Below, in pieces: positions 6,113 through 30,378 of a stretch of DNA of 30,378 nt. Position numbers and translations under genes: made by a program. The stretch is taken from contig NW_021832650.1 in assembly GCF_006345805.1 (NCBI RefSeq), positions 1 to 30,378 of the forward strand, read 5' to 3'. The DNA is from Octopus sinensis (lineage: Eukaryota). Position 1 is the stretch's first letter, and every line of letters begins with the position of its first letter. The notes under the pieces were generated by a model. The model was not told the DNA's origin and did no database searches. It was given only the letters and a program-made list of their open reading frames with translations.

Positions 6113-7846
6113 AATAATTGTGTACAGTGCTCAGGTGCACTACACAACTAATCTAAAGTGTATATATAATCAGGTGTAGTTTCGGCGGATTTCGGAAAGC
6201 ATGAGGGCCTTAAAAGATGCAGTGTCATGGCAGTCAACAACTGACGCAGGCAGTTTATTCCATGCTTCAGCAACTCTGAGCGTGAAAAAATGTTTCCGAA
6301 AGTCATGGGAGCTGTATTGTTTTCTGACTTTGTAGGCATGTCCACGTGTGTTAGACACATGGAGATCAAAAAGGTGTTCAGTGTTGTTGTTGGTGAGGTG
6401 GTTGATAACTTTGTGGGTGTTACCAAGTCCGTCGCCAAACGCCGGAGCTTCAGTGAATCCATGCCCAGGGAAACAAGGCGCTCCAGAATATGGTAGGTGT
6501 CTGATGGAGGGTATGCGTTTGGTTGCACGTCTCTGGACAGATTCCAGGAGGTCAATGTTCTGTGCAAGATAGGGGTTCCAAACTGATGATGCGAATTCCA
6601 AGTGTGGTCGTACCATAGCTGTATACAGTTTTAAATAGATGGCTGGAGAGCGGCTAACAAAAGACCTGCTGAGTGATGCCAAGACACCCTCGGCCTTCCT
6701 GACAATCTTAGAGATATGCTTTGACCAACGCAAATCACTGCTGACAGTGATGCCTAGTCACGCTCACAAGAGGATTTCTTGATATCAGTGTTGTGGAGGG
6801 TATGTGAACGCAGGGTTTTTTCTCCCAAAATGCATGGTGGTACCACTTGTCCACAGCCAGTTTCAGTTGCCAGTCTGTGATCCATTGCTGCATTGTGTCT
6901 AGGTCTGATTGCAGAAAGAGTTGTAGACATCAGGATCTGTCCTCTTGATTTCAAGTTACAGCTTGATGTCGTCTGCATATTTCAATACTGTGGCATTCCT
7001 TAAATTGGCATCTATGTCGTTAATGTATGCCACAAACAAGAGGGACCAAGGACAGATCCCTGTGGTACACCCGATGACATCTCATATGGTGTAGAGTGCT
7101 GTCCTAGAACTGTGACTACCTCCTTTCGGCTGAGGATGAAGGATTTCAACCAGTTAAAAAGGTCATCCCCCCACCCATTGCAGAGAGTTTCACCATAAGC
7201 CTTTGTGTGGCACAGAGTTGAAAGCCTTAGCAAAGTCAAGGTAGACAACATCCACCCATGAGCCACTGTCAGTAATCTGAGTAATGTCCTCAAGGAACTC
7301 GACAAGCTGGTCACTGCAGCTGGAGTTAGGGACAAATCCATATTGTGAGGGTCGGATGAGACTGTGAGAGCTCCAGAAGTTCCAGAGTGTTTCTATGACA
7401 CACGATTCCATCAGTTTTGCAATACAGCTAGTAGACTGACTGGGCGATAGTTGACAGGTGATGTGCGGTCGCCCTTTTTGAACAGGAGGATGACACTGGC
7501 AGTTTTCCACTGCTCCGGAGTAGCACCATTGTTGAGACAGTACTGGAAGAAAATAGAAAGCTGGTGTAAAAGGAAGTGCCTCCACGTTTGAGAAGCAGTA
7601 TGTAACTCCATCGAGACCAGGGGAGGCATAGTTGCGCTTATTTTGAAGGTGACGTCGCAGCATTGCAGGTGTAAATTCAGCAGGTGTTATGGAGTTTGCT
7701 GTTAGTGATGGTGATGAAATGGTATTTTGGCTTTCAACAGTGAATATGTTTGCATAGCACTCGGCAATGAGTTCTGCGCATTCCTTGGGGTCGTCAGTGA
7801 TCTGGTTTGTGTGAGGGTTGCGAAGAGGGCCCACTGGAGAGTGAGG
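6097..7846 (-). mobile_element. 5'-truncated, frameshifted CR1-clade LINE (ORF2 RT to 3' end, (ATT)n tail)
   Basis: Motifs YRPVSL, DVVYLDFAKAFNSVPH, SGVPQGSVLGP, YADD (6968-6979), RPHLEFASSVWNPY, LESVQRRATK, TRGHAYK and FFTLRVAEAWNKLP across several frames; ATT-repeat tail at 6097-6120. Confidence 0.95.
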
Positions 7847-9060: not shown

Positions 9061-9481
9061 ATATACATATATATTATATATATATATTACACATACATAC
9101 ATACATACCTACATATATAAATATATGTGTATGTGTGCGTGCATATGTATGTGTGTATGTATATTATATATATTATATATATATATATATACATATATAT
9201 ATACATATATATATATACATACCTATATATATGTGTGTGTGTGTGTGTACATATGTATGTATGAGTGTATATATTTGTGCATGTGTATATGTGTTTGTAT
9301 GCATGTATTGTGTATATGCACGTGAATATGTATTTACATAATTATGCTATATAAATGTATGTATGTATATACATCATACATATATATATATATATATATA
9401 TGAGCGTGTGTGTATATATATATATGTATTCATACATACAAAGATATATATATATATAGTATATTATATATACACACACAC

Positions 9482-11358: not shown

Positions 11359-12549
11359 ATTAGGCACAACTTCACAAACCAGCCCCATACTCAACTCGTC
11401 CTGTCGAAAGACCCTTGTCCTACGTCCTGGTTTTGTTTTGTTGTTTATTTTTTATTTTTACCGTTATTGTTTTTACGTTTTTGTATTCTTATTGGTGTCA
11501 CGTATTCTGTATTTTTGTTTGTGTACTTCGTTCGTTTTCCGTCCTCGCGTTGTATACATTCGAAGCTTTCTTCCAGGGGATCTAATGCGCTTGGCTTAGA
11601 TTTCCCTTGGCGGGCTGGCCATATCGGAGCAATCTCAAGATTAATCAGCCGAAATTGCTAAGATGATCTGGTTCTTGACTGATGACTGAGGGCTTCGAAT
11701 GTCCCGTCCTGTGGTTCTTGTGTCGTCTCTGTGGTGTTTCATGTTCTTGTCCATGTCTGTAATTATATTTTCACTGTTTACCTATATAATCGGCGGCTAC
11801 GTATCCACAATTGTCCTTATACGATAAGTATATTTTTTCTCTAGCATTGATACGACTCTTAATCTGTCTCTTTTTCTCTCTCTCTCTCCTCCTCCCTTAT
11901 TCCCCTTCCTTCTTTCCCTCTCCATCCGTCTCCCCCCCCTTCTACGTTTTTCTCTATCTCTCTCACCTCCAGCCCCCTCGATCTGTCTCTTTCTTCTCCT
12001 CCTCGTCCACCTTCTCTCTCTTTTCATCTGTCCCTTTCTCCTGTCTTTTGTTCTCACGTGACCGCTAGCCGCTGTTGAGCGCTCTTTTCGTTTTCAGCAG
12101 TCGCAGAAGCAACACGTATTTGTTCGTCTCCCCGTGCCATTAGGCACAACTTCACAAGCCAGCCCCATACTCAACTCGTCCTGTCGAAAGACCCTTGTCC
12201 TACGTCCTGGTTTTGTTTTGTTTTTTATTTTTATTTTTACCGTTATTGTTTTTACGTTTTTGTATTCTTATTGGTGTCACGTATTCTGTATTTGTGTACT
12301 TCGTTCGTTTTCCGTCCTCGCGTTGTATACATTCGAAGCTTTCTTCCAGGGGATCTAATGCGCTTGGCTTAGATTTCCCTTGGCGGGCTGGCCAATCGGA
12401 GCAATCTCAAGATTAAGCAGCCGAAATTGCTAAGATGATCTGGTTCTTGACTGATGACTGAGGGCTTCGAATGTCCCGTCCTGTGGTTCTTGTGTCGTCT
12501 CTGTGGTGTTTCATGTTCTTGTCCATGTCTTAATTTTATTTTCACTGTT

Positions 12550-12744: not shown

Positions 12745-13695
12745 AAATAAGTAACAAGGATGTCTATGTATCAATGCATAACGGCCGTTTCAAGCGGCTC
12801 CATTTAATCTATCAATGCAAACATTACACCAATTTGAAAGAAACCGCTCTTCTCAATTGCAGACGACCATATAGATTTCTAATATAAAGGATGAAATTAA
12901 AATTTAAGGTTTTAAGTTTAATAATCTATCTTTTTTTCTTTATATTGTTCTAAAATTCTTTTCTAAATTTTTAATATGATAAATTGGCTAAGTTATAACA
13001 AACCTCATAACCCTCGGTTCTAATTAACACCCTTAGAACTTATTTTGATCTCTTTTGTTTTCCACTTTATTCCCCTTTTATCTGATAATCGAGGTATGTA
13101 CTAGCCATCCCAGCCCTTCTTCCTTCCACTTATTACCTCTTCTCCATTCGTCATTCTTTTACTAGCAGCTCTGAGACATATCCTTTTATGCAGATAAAGC
13201 TAGATACATGGTCCCAGTAAAATAAGGGTCAGGGAGAGTATCTGACATTAATTAATCACCATAAGCTGGAACTTAACTGTCAACTCAAAATGGATTTAAC
13301 TCTAAAGGGTTGTAGACTATATGCTGCATAAATTCTTATAAATAAAATAAAGATAAAGATAAATTAACAATCTCAGCATTCCTTTTTCTTGACACCCACT
13401 ATTCTCTTCTGCTACTCTCTAAATTATAGTAGGCTTTAGAAATACATTTTCTCCTAAATTCATTTTACCACAAGCATAGCAAAGGGAAGCAACGTAAGTG
13501 TTTTGGTTGTCTAGTACTGATGTAAATTGGGCTTAAAAATAGTTTATCGTTTATATTGGAAATCTATATGGTCGTCTGCAACTGAGGAACGCAGTTTCTT
13601 TCAAACTGATGTAATGTTTGCATTGATCGATTAAACGGAGCCGCTTGAAACGGCCCTAATGCATTGATACCTGGAAATCCTTGTTACTTAATTGC
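12745..13695. mobile_element. ~950-bp element with ~150-bp terminal inverted repeats (inverted PLE pseudo-LTR type)
   Basis: 12745-12895 is the reverse complement of 13545-13695 (e.g. GGCCGTTTCAAGCGGCTCC...GCAGACGACCATATAGATTT). Each arm carries a decayed hammerhead-like motif. Confidence 0.85.
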
Positions 13696-13704
13696 TTTAT
13701 ATAT

Positions 13705-14089
13705 ATGCTCACCAGAGGAGTCCTTTTTCATCACGACAATGCTCCAGCCCACACCTCAGTCGTTGCCATGGCAACAATTGGTGACTGTGGATACAAATTT
13801 GTTCCCCATCCGCCTTATTCGCCAGACTTAGCCCCCTCTGACTTTCATCTATTCCCCAAAATGAAAAAAGCCCTGGCTGGTCGCCATTTTGCCAGTGACA
13901 ATGACATCATAGACGCTGTAGGAAGTTTCTTGGAGTCTCAAACAAAAGAGTTCCTCTTCGCCGGGATAATGGCACTTCGTCACCGCTGGAGAAAGTGTTC
14001 AGCCATCAAGGGGGACTAGGTTGAAAAATAAATAATCAAAAGTCTTGTACTGTTTTTTTTGAGACTCAAGACTTATCATACACCCCTCG
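13705..14089 (+). mobile_element. mariner transposase C-terminal fragment plus right TIR (irritans-like)
   Basis: GVLFHHDNAPAH...HPPYSPDLAPSDFHLF...RWRKC...GD*VEK* (TAG replaces Tyr); TIR ends CACCCCTCG followed by TA at 14090-14091. Confidence 0.95.
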
Positions 14090-14494: not shown

Positions 14495-15126
14495 GTATGT
14501 ATGACATTATTCAGTTTCATATCAAGATTTCTTGCCAATAGAGAAAGAGCCGGTTTCTAACCTAGATCCAAGGTTTTTCATTGGAATTTCAACATCAACA
14601 GAGTATGTATGTATGTATGTATGTATGTATGTATGTATGTATGTATGTATGTATGTATGTATGTATGTATGTATGCATGCAGATTTGTATGTTTTGCTTT
14701 ATGTATGTATTCTCACGCATATTGTTACATATCTAGACATGTTCATATATATTTAAATGATAAACCTCTCGAAAGTTTTACAGACTTTTACAGTTCCAGT
14801 GATGGATTGGATCTGTAGTCTTCGAATTAGCTTTCTCCTTTCTGGCTTTCAGAAGCCTAATTTCTCAAGATTAGTATTAAGGCAGTGTGTTACATATTCG
14901 AGGGCCCAATAATTACAGGTATAAACCCGAACTTGTAATTTGGATAGAGTAACTGCAAATTTCTCAATAGTTCAGCATAGGTGTTCTCTTTTTCACTGAT
15001 CTTCAACCTTATGTTAACATCCGCTGAGCAGCGAATTTTCTCTCTTCCAAATCATTACATCAAGTCTGTTGTGCTTACATTTTATTGAGGTCTTCACTGG
15101 AACATTCTATCTGTACTCCTTTTTAT
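14495..15126 (-). mobile_element. RLE-type non-LTR retrotransposon 3' fragment, copy 2 (younger), with 3'UTR
   Basis: HKKEYR*NVPVKTSIKCKHNRLDVMIW, EIRCSADVN, EKENTYAELLRNLQLLYP, IPVIIG and RLQIQSITGTVKVCKTFERFII* (stop 14753-14755); (CATA)n at both ends and inside the 3'UTR. Confidence 0.88.
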
Positions 15127-19467: not shown

Positions 19468-20300
19468 ATAATTTGGTTCGTTCCGCGTCTCCTTAAATGT
19501 TAAAACTAACGTAGGTAAATGATTCTTGTCTCTCTTAGATAAGCAACTGTCGAGACTCTAGAGCTTGCCCACTTGACCAGACGTGCATGATAAAATCCGT
19601 CGTATATGAGGCTGAACTCACAGCTACGCTGTATCATAATCTGACCGAAAAGAAGAATTACATCGTGTTATTCAAATGCGACTTCGAAAGATGCTATGCT
19701 AACCATCTATCTTTCCCACACATGGACAAAAGTAAAGCCTCTAAGTTAGCAAGCTACTTATGGAATTTGAAGACCAACTCCCCGCCACATAAAATCAAGT
19801 GGAAAAGCGTAGTAAAATCCGAGCCATATATTAATTGATCAAAAAATCCAAGTTATGCATAGCTGAAAGATCGCATATCCTTTTTAAATCTAAGAATCCC
19901 ACCAATTCCAGATCAAAAATTTTCAACAAGTTTCTTGGCGAATTAGAGAACACCACCCTCTCTGAATTGAGCACCTGTACCGCAGACTTTAGACCCCTTC
20001 AGTTGGTCCTACACAACTAGTTTATGGCTTTACGGTCAAAGGAGACATAACTTTAATTCGTTTCTTTTTTCCATTTCCCCCCGTTTTGTTCACCCTTCCA
20101 CATTTTGCATCCACCTTCCTCTCATTTTTCTAGTGATTTCTCTTGTTCTATTGCCCTGATTTGTAACTTGCATAGGCCATGTGCTCAGAACCCGATGACT
20201 GCTTAGGGACATTAAGCGTGTTATTAAAACTTGCCTATACAATATCTCCAATGTATGACACTATTAGTTGCTCATAACTATATACCGTTTACGTTAAACA
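19468..20300 (+). mobile_element. Penelope-like linker plus GIY-YIG endonuclease relic and 3' region
   Basis: IIWF...NVKTNVGK*FLSLLDK, SNCRDSRACPLDQTCMIKSVVYEA, NYI, FERCYANH, SKLASYLWNLK, IKW, KLCIAE and NSRSKIF. Confidence 0.88.
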
Positions 20301-20381: not shown

Positions 20382-20444
20382 ATGTATGTATGTACTTACA
20401 TACACACTTACATATATATATATATATAAACAAAAAATCACTAT

Positions 20445-21006
20445 ATCTTCTATCTTTTACTTGTTTCAGTCATTAGACTATGGGCGTGTTGGGACACCGC
20501 CTTCAAGAATTTTTAGTCGAATGTATCGATTCCAGTGCTTATCTTGTTTTAATATCCGGTACTTATTCAACCGCTCTACTTTGCCGATCAGCCAAGTTAC
20601 GGGGATTTAAACACACCAATACCGGTTGTTAAGGATGGGTGGGGGCAGACACACACACACACATGTACACTCTCTTCCCAAAATCAGGTCGGGTGAATCA
20701 TCTGGCATAATGTCCTGTTTTGGAAGAACATCTTATTGTTAATTCTTACCTGTATTCACCTGATGAAAACGTTTTTCTTTTGCATGATGTAGCACTTTTG
20801 TTCACTAATAAAGAACACGTTTAAAATAGCTGTAGTGAACCGCAGCTTATAGGTGTTATATATATATTTCAGTTTCCGTCAACGAAATCCTGTAGCACCG
20901 AGGCTGTAGTAGAATACATTGACCCAAGGTTCCCAACAGTCGGACAGGAACCCGAACAATGTGGTTGGGAAGCAAGCTTCTTACCACACATCCACACCTG
21001 CGCCTA
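20445..21006 (-). mobile_element. Bipartite SINE (tRNA/CORE-like 5' half 20866-21006, 3' half 20445-20665) interrupted by ~190 bp of unique DNA
   Basis: The 5' half matches 25035-25195 and the 3' half ends in the shared CCGCC...CAGCATG/TGACTGAAACAAGTAAAAGA type tail. Confidence 0.8.
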
Positions 21007-21931: not shown

Positions 21932-22009
21932 CATACATACATATATATATACACACATACACACATATATATATATACATATATGTATGTATGCATGCGT
22001 GTATGTATG

Positions 22010-22040
<31 letters not shown>

Positions 22041-22814: not shown

Positions 22815-22912
22815 ACCGATAGAATAAGTACTGAAGTCGATTCATTCAGGTAAAAATTCTTCTAGGTGTTGCCCCAGCATGGCCGCAGTCTAAAGGCTGA
22901 AACAAGTAAATT
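22815..22912 (+). mobile_element. SINE 3' fragment
   Basis: ACCGATAGAATAAGTACTG..GTCGATTCATTC...GCCCCAGCATGGCCGCAGTCTAAAGGCTGAAACAAGTAAA. Confidence 0.85.
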
Positions 22913-23604
22913 ATATAAGATAAATGTCATACTACAAAAAAACATAACTGGAGGTCATAACTCACCAAGGGGCGTTATGTCGTACTGTTATGTAGTTTCA
23001 ACAGAAAACCAACTTACATCAGTTGTTGCGCTTCAGCAAGTACACATCCACACATCACCTGTCTCCACCAAGATCTTGCTGGTGCTCTCATTAACTATGT
23101 AGGCTCTTTAAGGTTAAGCAAAACGTTGGATGTTACTCTATACAATCTTTAAACATATCCTCTTCATACAAGATCAGAGAATTCAGTAAAATAAGCTGAC
23201 GGAATTTAAAGATACCTTCATTTCTCAAAGATATGATTGAAGTAGTTACGTTTCATTTTGTCTTCTCCAATTACATTTAGTTTTTATTTCATCTCCTTTC
23301 AATAACCTTTAATCATATATTATTCTAAGTGGTTGCTAACATACATATCTGTCCTTATCTAGGCACAGACAATCACACGCATGCGCACGTCACAGCCCGT
23401 GCACACCTGCGCACACACACACGTCTGCATACACATACACCTGCACATATACATACACATACACACCACATACACATACACACAAACACACGCCTGCACA
23501 CATGCACAGATCTGCATACATACACAAACACATCGCGCACACATACAGACACACCGTGCACAAACGTATACATATGAGCATATTATAATTATGTTGAGTG
23601 ACAT

Positions 23605-24384: not shown

Positions 24385-24422
<38 letters not shown>

Positions 24423-24598
24423 CATATATATATATATATATATATGAGTAATTGAATGAATTATCTTATTAAGGATAATTCGAAAAATAACCGATACCTG
24501 GGTAGCAAATTCACACCAGAAAGAACACGGTTGAAGCTACGTCCCTAGGGCATAGACTACGTGTCTTCGTGCGGAAATTTGTATGTTTATTTTAAAAT

Positions 24599-24806
24599 TA
24601 TAAGTATATGAAAGAATGGAGTTGAACGACTAGTTAACAAATAGTTAACATTTTGATGTCGACATAAGTTTCCTTGATTTTCCTGAAGAGAAATCTGCAT
24701 AATGTACTCCTTATTCCTTCGGAATTAGGAATATGCAGCCTTCGAAACATATGTCGAGAATAAAGGATATTTGTTAACTAGTCGTTCAACTCCATTCTTT
24801 CATATA

Positions 24807-24812
<6 letters not shown>
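24599..24812. repeat. Perfect 45-bp inverted repeat (24599-24643 and 24768-24812) enclosing a hammerhead
   Basis: TATAAGTATATGAAAGAATGGAGTTGAACGACTAGTTAACAAATA and its exact reverse complement. Confidence 0.97.
24671..24767 (+). ncRNA. Type I hammerhead ribozyme with canonical core (PLE-associated, short palindromic stem III)
   Basis: Stem I 24671-24682/24756-24767 (11 of 12 pairs); CUGAAGA 24683-24689; stem II closed by G24690-C24743 (GAA/UUC then CUGCAUA/UAUGCAG); GAAA 24744-24747; stem III AC-AUAU-GU; GUC cleavage triplet 24753-24755. Confidence 0.85.
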
Positions 24813-24847
<35 letters not shown>

Positions 24848-24919
24848 TTTTTAGAAAACATAAATCCGGTGAAGAAGTACACTCTAAGAAGTAGAGTTGT
24901 CAATGTTTATATTTATATA

Positions 24920-25236
24920 CAGGGTAGGGTGAATGAACTGTCGTCGAAATTATGCAAAAATGAAAATGACACTGACATATCATTTTAACTGATATATTTA
25001 CCAAAATTACATAAACATATATTGAAGTGGTTGTTAGGCGCAGGAGTGGGTGTGTGGTAAGTAGCTTCCAACCACATGATTCCGGGTTCAGCCCCACTGC
25101 ATGGCACCTTGAGCAAGTGTCTTCTACTATAGACTCGGACCGACCAAAGCTTTGTGAGCGGTTTTGGTAGATGGAAACTGAAAGAAGCGTGTCGTATATA
25201 TATACATATACATACATACTACATACATACATACAT

Positions 25237-29642: not shown

Positions 29643-30378
29643 ATTCATTCATTTATTGACCACAATGGATTACATAAAACAATATGAAGAGACAAAGACA
29701 GGATGATGCAAAGGGTTTTAAAACGTGTAAACAAAAATAACAAACAAAATTAAACAAATAAAACTTCCAATAGGGGAGACGCTTTAAGGTTAATCGCGGA
29801 AAACCCCACAAAAGCCACGACTGCATGACCAACAGAGAAAGATCCCTTCTTTTATTTTTCACAAGTTCATGCTCAAAATGGGGCCTTTCACACTGACCAT
29901 TTTTCCGACATTCACCCACCTTTCAACAAATTTTCTAGAAGGCAACACTTCTCTCTCCACCTTCACTTTCCTTTTCAAGTGAAAACGTTTATGAGGCCTT
30001 GGCCAAAGAGGAAAGTGTCTGTCTTTAGCCCCTTCAAACGTGTCCACCATACTCCCTCATTTGCTACAGCCGCTAGACAAATAAAATTTGCCTGCCCCTC
30101 CCGACCAAAGGAAGGTGGCGGGGCAACCTTCACTATGGATTCAGCTGATAGCTGGATACGCCCCACAGGCGACAGCAGGTGTTCGACATAAATCCGCAGG
30201 TCAGCAATGCTCGGGCACAGGACGAGTGCGTGCAGAACGGTTTCGTCCCTCTGCGTACACCTCGAGTAGTTCCGGCTAACGGCACTTCCGTGCCTGTAAA
30301 GTTTATCCCGAACGGGCAGCACCCCTCGGTAGAACGACTAGGCGAGGAATTTCTGGAAGTTATCCATAGGCTCCGTCC
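29643..30378 (-). mobile_element. L1/Tx1-clade LINE ORF2 C-terminus and 3'UTR (continues beyond the window)
   Basis: LPVRDKL...SRC...ETVLHALVLCP zinc-knuckle region, VWWTR, frameshift near 30000, stop at 29859, AATAAA at 29657-29652. Confidence 0.88.

What the first reader, a model, noticed from the sequence alone, without database searches (positions are those of the whole stretch)
24671..24767. Intact-looking type I hammerhead ribozyme, possibly intronic and sense to a host gene
Seen: every conserved core position is present (CUGAAGA, G10.1-C11.1, GAAA, A15.1-U16.1, GUC), with an 11/12-pair stem I and an unusually long branched stem II. Known: short palindromic stem III hammerheads are characteristic of Penelope-like element ends and tend to cleave efficiently only as dimers. 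Inference: it is the only undecayed hammerhead among several here and lies on the same strand, ~1.3-2 kb upstream of the candidate host exons, so it could cleave a host pre-mRNA.
Basis: partly seen in the sequence, partly recalled or inferred. Interest (0 to 1): 0.85.

Follow-up and report, generated by a model that had tools for sequence, protein, structure and literature searches.

The report
Transposon-borne hammerhead ribozyme in octopus DNA
The hammerhead ribozyme motif is real and intact, but it is the 3' module of a short interspersed repeat found in octopus genomes, with no sign of a host gene around it, so it is an ordinary transposon-type hammerhead with one odd local feature, a perfect 45-bp hairpin.

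Summary
A complete type I hammerhead lies at 24671-24767 (+), with cleavage predicted after C24755. All core positions are present. Rfam Hammerhead_1 scores 30.2 bits, below the gathering cut-off of 34 bits, largely because stem II carries a 50-nt insertion. Such a motif appears in 6 of 1000 random 30-kb windows.

It is part of a ~364-bp element (24446-24809) set in (TA)n microsatellite. A paralogous copy at an unrelated Octopus sinensis locus has the same 5' head, the same hammerhead near the 3' end, the same tail and the same (TA)n flanks. That copy keeps the catalytic core and shows four compensatory stem changes. This fits a non-autonomous, Penelope-like or retrozyme-type retroelement: a new member of a known kind.

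Stem II is long but unbranched. No other hammerhead is detectable in the window. No protein-coding exon was found between 20.8 and 29.2 kb, so the host-gene reading has no support.

Together they fold the locus into a rod that competes with the hammerhead fold. This feature is specific to this copy.

The parts
24446..24809 (+). One whole copy of a ~364-bp interspersed element: 5' head, middle, inverted tail copy, hammerhead, 3' tail
   Evidence: Homologous element at L014:17682-18193 (O. sinensis), with matching head, hammerhead and tail and (TA)n on both sides. Flanks outside the (TA)n are not homologous.
24386..24445 (.). (CA)n(TA)n microsatellite abutting the 5' end of the element
   Evidence: Sequence. 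The L014 copy is likewise preceded by (TA)n.
24446..24530 (+). Conserved 5' head (..TGAATGAATTATC...GGGTAGCAAATTCAC..)
   Evidence: MAFFT alignment A2, columns 1-95, against L014.
24599..24643 (.). Left arm of the perfect 45-nt inverted repeat, an inverted copy of the element's own 3' tail
   Evidence: the repeat finder I7, 100% complementary, 124 nt between the arms. Absent from the L014 copy. The repeat does not extend outward.
24659..24672 (+). Inner inverted segment UCGACAUAAGUUUC. It pairs with GAAACAUAUGUCGA (24744-24757) and so competes with the hammerhead core, helix III and the cleavage site.
   Evidence: 13 of 14 complementary; 0 of 2000 shuffles reach the score. This pairing is part of the minimum-free-energy (MFE) rod.
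24671..24682 (+). Hammerhead helix I, 5' strand
   Evidence: Pairs with 24756-24767 in 11 of 12 positions. Two compensatory changes against L014.
24683..24689 (+). Catalytic box CUGAAGA (C3-A9)
   Evidence: Sequence, and the Rfam alignment.
24690..24743 (+). Helix II: a 54-nt unbranched imperfect hairpin closed by G10.1-C11.1
   Evidence: Fold. Two compensatory changes and one repaired mismatch against L014.
24744..24755 (+). GAAA box, 2-bp helix III with AUAU loop (palindrome ACAUAUGU), and C17. Predicted cleavage between 24755 and 24756.
   Evidence: Sequence, Rfam alignment, dimer cofold.
24756..24767 (+). Hammerhead helix I, 3' strand
24768..24812 (+). 3' tail of the element (..GTTCAACTCCATT..ACTTA), which is also the right arm of the 45-nt inverted repeat
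24809..24845 (.). (TA)n microsatellite abutting the 3' end of the element
   Evidence: Sequence. The L014 copy has the same arrangement.

Best explanation
The hammerhead is the 3'-proximal ribozyme module of a short (~0.36-0.5 kb), AT-rich, non-coding interspersed retroelement family of octopod genomes. This copy is solitary and sits in a (TA)n microsatellite.

By analogy with elements that carry hammerheads in Penelope-like pseudo-LTRs, and with metazoan non-LTR retrozymes, the ribozyme would process the element's own transcripts. It would cut after C17, leaving 2',3'-cyclic phosphate and 5'-OH ends. It would work best when two copies pair through the palindromic helix III.

At this locus the element also carries an inverted copy of its own last ~74 nt: a perfect 45-nt arm plus a 13/14 match to GAAAC..GUCGA. 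A transcript of the locus is therefore predicted to fold into a 214-nt rod that sequesters the GAAA box and the cleavage site. This copy is most likely a dead-end monomer with an attenuated ribozyme and no host function.

Shown: the motif, the paralogue, the covariation, the flanks, and the inverted repeat with its energetics. Inferred: retrotransposition, dependence on a Penelope-like element, self-cleavage, attenuation.
For: The core is intact and Rfam Hammerhead_1 gives 30.2 bits. Chance expectation is 0.006 per window.

A paralogous copy at an unrelated O. sinensis locus shares head, hammerhead, tail and (TA)n flanks. Its outer flanks are unrelated.

Both copies keep CUGANGA, GAAA and GUC despite ~27% divergence. 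There are 4 compensatory pairs, and 87.5% of cells are paired against 39-50% in the slid controls.

Helix III is palindromic in both copies (ACAUAUGU and ACAUGU), and a dimer is favoured.

Head and tail form no terminal inverted repeats, and the element has no ORF with homologues.

The literature reports, for Penelope-like elements, a (TA)n/(CA)n target bias, hammerheads near the 3' end, and adjacent inverted 5'-truncated copies (PMC8557442). It also reports small palindromic helix III and long helix II (PMC4209133), and dispersed monomer derivatives of retrozymes related to the pseudo-LTRs (10.64898/2026.07.22.740005).

The rod trap rests.
Against: Only two family members could be retrieved, so copy number, consensus and covariation statistics are thin; 27 of 500 shuffles reach the observed covariation.

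No Penelope-like RT/GIY-YIG ORF lies next to either copy, and no autonomous partner sharing the tail was found.

The copies are solitary, not tandem as in retrozymes.

The Rfam score is below the gathering cut-off, and the L014 copy is not called by Rfam at all.

Cleavage and transcription are untested.

Nearest-neighbour energies ignore the tertiary core, and they also disfavour the hammerhead fold in the L014 context, by 5.9 kcal/mol. The attenuation claim is therefore relative.
Confidence: 0.75

Rival explanations
1. An exapted host ribozyme. The hammerhead sits in an intron, sense to a host gene, and cleaves the pre-mRNA to regulate it, like the conserved intronic hammerheads of amniotes.
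For: The core is intact. Large octopod introns could span the whole window, so an intronic location is not excluded.
Against: No coding exon is detectable between 20.8 and 29.2 kb on either strand. The motif belongs to a repeat with an unrelated paralogous locus. The local rod fold disfavours the active conformation. In Xenopus, retrozyme copies are depleted from introns (10.64898/2026.07.22.740005).
Confidence: 0.05
2. The primary entity is the 214-bp hairpin (24599-24812): a foldback or MITE-like DNA element, or a hairpin-RNA or miRNA-like locus. The hammerhead would be an incidental passenger in its loop.
For: Perfect 45-bp arms and a fold of -101.7 kcal/mol with z -16.5. The arm ends are TA-rich. 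There are generic hairpin-type Rfam hits such as MIR821 at 41 bits against a gathering score of 249.
Against: The O. sinensis paralogue has the hammerhead, tail and head but no inverted repeat. The repeat is therefore secondary to the hammerhead element, not the reverse. No second copy of the hairpin exists in the window or in ~92 kb of searched sequence, of which about 62 kb is sampled octopus DNA. The miRNA-family hits are far below their gathering scores.
Confidence: 0.1
3. A chance match to the hammerhead consensus in AT-rich DNA.
For: The Rfam score is below the gathering cut-off. Folding of the 97-nt motif alone gives a z-score of only -2.2.
Against: Expected 0.006 per window. An independent paralogue retains every core nucleotide and shows compensatory stem changes.
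Confidence: 0.02
4. A DNA copy of a viroid-like or retrozyme circular RNA. The quasi-palindromic 214-nt rod with a hammerhead would be a linearised monomer of a rod-shaped self-cleaving circRNA.
For: The rod size falls within the 170-400 nt of metazoan retrozyme circRNAs (PMC7229834). The rod and hammerhead alternative folds resemble viroid switching. On the minus strand the inner inverted segment reads GAAACUUAUGUC, which is half of a hammerhead.
Against: The minus strand has no CUGANGA box (sequence). There is only one cleavage site, so no circle can be released. There is no tandem arrangement. The element has fixed linear ends shared with L014.
Confidence: 0.04

Closest known systems
Hammerhead ribozyme type I (Rfam RF00163)
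   Same: All 11 conserved core nucleotides, G10.1-C11.1, three helices with helix I open, and a GUC cleavage triplet. The match covers the full model.
   Different: The 54-nt helix II (a 50-nt insertion relative to the model) pulls the score to 30.2, below the 34-bit gathering score. No recognisable loop 1-loop 2 tertiary motif exists, and the internal loops are not conserved in position between the two copies.
Hammerheads of Penelope-like elements (Cervera & de la Pena 2014, PMC4209133; Craig et al. 2021, PMC8557442)
   Same: A small palindromic helix III, a longer than usual helix II, a position near the 3' end of a retroelement, insertion into (TA)n/(CA)n microsatellite, and an adjacent inverted 5'-truncated copy that creates inverted repeats.
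   Different: No RT/GIY-YIG ORF and no pseudo-LTR pair at either locus. [quoted passage not shown] Helix I is 12 bp rather than 4-5 bp. The inverted copy lies inside the element, just upstream of the ribozyme, rather than upstream of the whole unit.
Metazoan non-LTR retrozymes and their monomer derivatives (PMC7229834; bioRxiv 10.64898/2026.07.22.740005)
   Same: A type I hammerhead in a non-coding repeat of a few hundred bp with low GC. Helix III is 2 bp plus a tetraloop, as in invertebrate retrozymes. Dispersed monomer copies are known.
   Different: Both copies are solitary, not tandem. Both have the same fixed 5' and 3' ends, like a SINE, rather than circularly permuted ends. No circRNA evidence exists.
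Schistosoma Sm-alpha SINE-like hammerhead element (Ferbeyre et al. 1998, cited in PMC4209133; my own knowledge)
   Same: A short interspersed non-autonomous element that carries a type I hammerhead.
   Different: No sequence similarity was tested. No pol III-type head was recognised here: ARAGORN finds no tRNA-like head.
Conserved intronic hammerheads of amniotes (de la Pena & Garcia-Robles 2010, cited in PMC7229834)
   Different: Those are single-copy and ultraconserved with their host genes. This one is a diverged repeat copy with no detectable host exon.

Membership tests
Hammerhead ribozyme, type I | Conserved core: C3 U4 G5 A6 N7 G8 A9, G12 A13 A14, A15.1-U16.1, and H17 that is not G | tested here: met
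   24683-24689 CUGAAGA, 24744-24747 GAAA, A24747-U24754, C24755.
Hammerhead ribozyme, type I | Three helices around the core, with helix I open | tested here: met
   Helix I 11/12 bp, helix II a 54-nt hairpin, helix III 2 bp plus tetraloop. Four compensatory pairs against the paralogue.
Hammerhead ribozyme, type I | Reaches the Rfam RF00163 gathering score (34 bits) | tested here: not met
   30.2 bits, E 6.9e-6 in the local scan. Missed in the whole-window scans. The paralogue is not called at E<=1.
Hammerhead ribozyme, type I | Site-specific self-cleavage giving 2',3'-cyclic phosphate and 5'-OH ends | not testable with these tools
   Needs in vitro transcription and end mapping.
Hammerheads of Penelope-like elements | Located in the pseudo-LTR of an element encoding RT plus a GIY-YIG endonuclease | tested here: not met
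   No such ORF lies within about 4 kb on either side. The ORF at 19539-20017 has no Pfam, PDB-sequence or fold match to GIY-YIG.
Hammerheads of Penelope-like elements | Palindromic 15.2-16.2 and loop 3, allowing a dimeric active form | tested here: met
   ACAUAUGU in the window and ACAUGU in L014. The cofold gives an 8-bp intermolecular helix III.
Hammerheads of Penelope-like elements | [quoted passage not shown] | tested here: inconclusive
   Helix II is enlarged (met). Helix I is 12 bp and there is no extra nucleotide (not met).
Hammerheads of Penelope-like elements | Integration into (TA)n/(CA)n microsatellites, with inverted 5'-truncated copies | tested here: met
   Both copies have (TA)n on both sides. 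The window copy has an inverted copy of the last ~74 nt.
Metazoan non-LTR retrozymes | Tandem repeats (dimers to multimers) of 150-450 bp units, each carrying a type I hammerhead | tested here: not met
   A single hammerhead at each locus, with no second copy in the window or in L014.
Metazoan non-LTR retrozymes | Expression as linear and circular RNAs of unit length | not testable with these tools
   No transcriptome access.
Interspersed non-autonomous retroelement (SINE-like) | Multiple dispersed copies with the same 5' and 3' ends at unrelated loci | tested here: met
   Window 24446-24809 and L014:17682-18193 share ends, while their outer flanks are unrelated. n = 2 only.
Interspersed non-autonomous retroelement (SINE-like) | Head derived from a pol III gene (tRNA, 5S or 7SL) | tested here: inconclusive
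   ARAGORN finds nothing. No Rfam hit on the head.
MITE / DNA transposon | Terminal inverted repeats at the element ends | tested here: not met
   Head against reverse-complemented tail is not significant in either copy.

The most novel reading that the evidence does not exclude
Octopods may carry a very abundant hammerhead-bearing interspersed element; one paralogue turned up in only about 62 kb of randomly sampled octopus DNA. Copies such as this one, where an inverted tail duplication builds a perfect 45-bp dsRNA stem around the ribozyme, might act as gated ribozymes or as hairpin substrates for ADAR or Dicer. That would link self-cleaving RNA to the heavy RNA editing of cephalopods or to their small-RNA pathways.
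Probability: 0.07. Interest if true: 0.6.

Novelty: new member of a known kind. Interest (0 to 1): 0.3.

Why it matters
The finding adds cephalopods to the animals known to carry transposon-borne type I hammerheads. No paper in the searchable library describes one. It also defines a concrete element, with head, ribozyme, tail and (TA)n target, and a covariance model that can be used to census octopod genomes. The Rfam Hammerhead_1 model under-calls this family: one copy scores below the gathering cut-off and the other is missed entirely. Genome annotation of octopods will therefore miss these ribozymes. The hairpin-embedded copy is a natural test case for how flanking sequence can switch a hammerhead off. 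For the host gene question the result is negative: nothing here suggests regulation of a gene.

Tried and rejected
1. Whole-window Rfam scans at the gathering and E-value thresholds found no hammerhead. Only the local scan did.

2. A search for other copies in the window by self-BLAST found none.

3. Other 'hammerheads' were checked. 20755-20839 has one core mismatch and is rejected by Rfam and by model R1. The CUGAUGA sites in the 775-bp tandem duplication at 11.3-12.5 kb and in the mariner fragment are not hammerheads.

4. I looked for an extension of the inverted repeat beyond the 45-nt arms, which had seemed plausible by eye. It is not significant.

5. A direct-repeat (partial tandem) reading of the left inner segment is not significant; only the inverted alignment is.

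6. Pattern scans for relatives covered viral contigs, JGI metagenomes (12 hits, all in coding DNA without stems) and prokaryotic genomes. All were empty or chance.

7. A six-frame peptide search of the element gave no hit. Exact ORF look-ups for the element and for 10 window ORFs found nothing on record.

8. The idea that the ORF at 19539-20017 is a Penelope-type GIY-YIG endonuclease came from memory. Pfam gave only DUF7298 at E 0.057, ten homologues have no Pfam domain, and neither a PDB profile search nor a Foldseek search gave a match.

9. Terminal inverted repeats of the MITE type are not present.

10. Orthology of the window locus and the L014 locus is rejected, because the flanks are unrelated.

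11. The supplement of PMC8557442, which might list octopus Penelope-like consensus sequences, is not held.

Full report
**1. The observation**

Reading 24400-25000 shows a complete type I hammerhead on the + strand.

| Feature | Coordinates | Sequence or note |
|---|---|---|
| Helix I, 5' strand | 24671-24682 | UCCUUGAUUUUC |
| Catalytic box | 24683-24689 | CUGAAGA |
| Helix II | 24690-24743 | closed by G10.1-C11.1 |
| GAAA box | 24744-24747 | GAAA |
| Helix III | 24747-24754 | A-U and C-G closing an AUAU loop |
| C17 | 24755 | cleavage between 24755 and 24756 |
| Helix I, 3' strand | 24756-24767 | GAGAAUAAAGGA |

- Helix I has 11 of 12 positions paired, including one G-U and one G.A mismatch.
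- Rfam at its gathering thresholds reports nothing in the window, and the whole-window E-value scan does not list the motif either.
- A local scan of 24590-24820 gives RF00163 Hammerhead_1 at 24677-24761. The match spans the full model with a 50-nt insertion in helix II, at 30.2 bits against a gathering score of 34 and E 6.9e-6.
- Scaled linearly to the whole window, that E-value is about 1e-3. This scaling is my inference.
- My own descriptor required a perfect core, helix I of at least 5 bp, helix II of at least 3 bp and helix III of at least 2 bp. It finds this site and no other on either strand.
- The same descriptor fires in 6 of 1000 Markov-1 random windows.
- Folded alone, the 97-nt motif adopts the hammerhead secondary structure within 0.8 kcal/mol of the minimum free energy (MFE) fold.

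**2.

- Helix II is long but is one imperfect hairpin. It runs 3 bp, a 2x2 internal loop, 7 bp, a 6-nt asymmetric loop, 4 bp, a U.U mismatch, 5 bp and a UUC loop. It is not branched.
- 'Several hammerheads' could not be reproduced.
  - The only one-mismatch candidate is 20755-20839, where GAAA has become AAAA. It has no Rfam hammerhead hit at E<=10 and scores 16 bits, E 0.42, with the family model.
  - One such hit compares with 0.15 expected by chance.
  - The CUGAUGA boxes in the 775-bp tandem duplication at 11.3-12.5 kb and near the mariner fragment are not hammerheads.

**3. What surrounds it**

- The window is 35% GC and crowded with (TA)n, (CA)n and (TACA)n microsatellites and transposon debris.
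- An RTE/jockey-type RT ORF at 6170-6757 (-) has its best hits in Octopus sinensis (65%) and O. vulgaris (66-78%). The window is therefore octopod DNA.
- Further in, 24659-24672 (UCGACAUAAGUUUC) is a 13/14 inverted copy of 24744-24757 (GAAACAUAUGUCGA). No shuffle in 2000 reaches that score. A direct-repeat reading is not significant.
- The repeat does not extend outward beyond the 45-nt arms.
- As RNA, 24595-24815 folds into a rod of -101.7 kcal/mol, z -16.5. In that rod the inner segment pairs with the GAAA box, helix III and the cleavage site.
- Forcing the hammerhead fold in the same context costs 8.1 kcal/mol (-93.6), an ensemble fraction of about 6e-7.
- The competitor lies upstream, so it also wins before the right arm is transcribed (-38.6 against -31.6).
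- These energies ignore the tertiary core of the ribozyme, so they are indicative only.

**4. Relatives**

- Pattern scans of viral contigs, JGI metagenomes and prokaryotic genomes gave only chance hits or nothing.
- A six-frame peptide search of the element and exact ORF look-ups also gave nothing.
- Octopus DNA could be sampled only around the RTE homologues found: four loci, about 62 kb non-redundant.
- One of them, L014 (O. sinensis CM016860.1, 206.12 Mb), contains a homologous element at L014:17682-18193. BLASTN gives 73.6% identity over the hammerhead and tail.
- The full alignment shows the same 5' head (..TGAATGAATTATC....GGGTAGCAAAATTCAC..), a hammerhead at L014:18058-18152, and the same tail (GTTCAACTCCATT..ACTTA). 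(TA)n lies immediately on both sides, as in the window.
- Sequences outside the (TA)n are unrelated. These are therefore independent insertions of one interspersed family, not orthologous loci.
- The L014 copy has about 150 nt more in the middle and has no inverted repeat.
- Its hammerhead keeps CUGAUGA, GAAA and GUC. It has G10.1-U11.1, and its helix III is reduced to the palindrome ACAUGU. Rfam does not call it at E<=1.
- On the two-sequence alignment there are four compensatory double changes: two in helix I, one in proximal helix II and one in distal helix II. The window's U.U mismatch is repaired in L014.
- 87.5% of cells are paired, against 39-50% when the partners are slid. 27 of 500 shuffles reach the observed covariation, which is weak statistics with n = 2.
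- A covariance model built from the pair (R1) was searched with filters off over 92 kb. It recovers only the two training copies.

**5. What it is**

- The element has no ORF with homologues, no terminal inverted repeats and no tRNA-like head.
- It has fixed ends shared by two unrelated loci, a hammerhead about 55 nt from its 3' end, and microsatellite flanks.
- These traits match what is published for Penelope-like elements (PLEs) and their non-autonomous derivatives:
  - a small palindromic helix III and an enlarged helix II with predicted dimeric action (PMC4209133);
  - retrozymes related to PLE pseudo-LTRs, with dispersed monomer derivatives (PMC7229834; bioRxiv 10.64898/2026.07.22.740005).
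- RNAcofold supports the dimer: -57.0 against 2 x -23.1 kcal/mol, with an 8-bp intermolecular helix III.
- I therefore file it as a new member of the transposon-borne type I hammerheads. It is closest to the PLE/retrozyme group but is not a proven member. [quoted passage not shown]

**6. The inverted tail copy**

Read on the minus strand, 24672 to 24599 spells GAAACUUAUGUCGA, then a 15-nt spacer, then the 45-nt tail. This is the last ~74 nt of the element in inverted orientation, placed just upstream of the ribozyme. There are two readings:

- an inverted duplication, arising during reverse transcription or by later DNA template switching;
- a nested, severely 5'-truncated second insertion in opposite orientation at an AT-rich site.

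Neither reading explains why the 45 nt are identical while the adjacent spacer (15 nt against 10 nt) is unrelated. I leave this open.

**7. The host gene idea**

- All stop-free stretches of 45 codons or more, with reasonable complexity, on both strands between 20.8 and 29.2 kb, were concatenated (2364 aa).
- They were searched against 5.8 billion proteins, which include annotated Octopus proteomes. Nothing scored E<=0.01.
- Shorter exons, UTR exons and non-coding RNAs would escape this test, and the whole window could lie inside one large intron. 'Intronic and sense' therefore cannot be decided. The specific 'candidate exons' 1.3-2 kb downstream are unsupported.

**8. Verdict**

The motif is real, more than chance, and intact. 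It is a transposon module rather than a host device. At this locus it is predicted to be held in an inactive rod. Novelty: a new member of a known kind. Interest is modest.

Noticed in passing
L014:17682-18193 (O. sinensis CM016860.1, about 206.138 Mb): A paralogous copy of the hammerhead element, 511 bp, with an intact core but G10.1-U11.1 and a loop-less palindromic helix III. Rfam does not detect it. One copy in about 62 kb of random sampling hints at a high copy number.
   Followed up: yes
window 19539-20017 (+): A frameshifted ORF of a large uncharacterised protein family: 741 homologues at E<=1e-3, consensus CNCRxKxxCPLDGxC..IIYxAxV..YIGLT..FKxRYxNHxxSF..CxLCxxEK. There is no Pfam domain (DUF7298 only at E 0.057) and no PDB sequence or fold match. 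The AlphaFold model has pLDDT 80. It looks like a transposon protein. My memory-based guess of a GIY-YIG nuclease was not confirmed.
   Followed up: partly
window 20755-20839 (+): A hammerhead-like arrangement with AAAA in place of GAAA, about 740 bp downstream of the ORF above. It has no support from Rfam or from the family model and is probably chance.
   Followed up: yes
window 11359-11758 and 12139-12530: A tandem duplication with a period of about 775 bp and 96-100% identity. It is non-coding by eye and contains CUGAUGA boxes that are not hammerheads.
   Followed up: partly
window 6170-7834 (-): A decayed RTE/jockey-type LINE reverse transcriptase in several frames. It is 79-82% identical in DNA to copies in O. 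sinensis and O. vulgaris, and this identified the window as octopod.
   Followed up: partly
window 13660-14016 (+): The C-terminal fragment of a mariner-type transposase (..HHDNAPAHTS..PYSPDLAPSDFHLFPKMK..), recognised by eye only.
   Followed up: no
window 25035-25138 / 20898-21006 and 22824-22922 / 20444-20542: Copies of short interspersed repeats in opposite orientations, also present in O. sinensis L014 (86% identity). They resemble the abundant octopus SINE that I recall from microsatellite flanks.
   Followed up: no
window 29975-30322 (-): An ORF resembling the C-terminal zinc-finger region of a LINE reverse transcriptase, at the edge of the window.
   Followed up: no
whole window, e.g. 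21939-22020, 14609-14681, 9085-9166: Microsatellites give dozens of spurious sub-threshold Rfam miRNA hits (mir-3149, mir-297, mir-466). These are not genes.
   Followed up: no
window 24644-24658 against L014:18011-18033: The 15-nt spacer of the inverted tail copy (minus strand CATCAAAATGTTAAC) resembles a direct-orientation stretch upstream of the L014 hammerhead (TTATGCAGTCATCAAAATTGTTA; 19 of 23 matches; 22 of 500 shuffles reach the score). It may be a remnant of a second kind of post-cleavage sequence in the family. Unresolved.
   Followed up: partly
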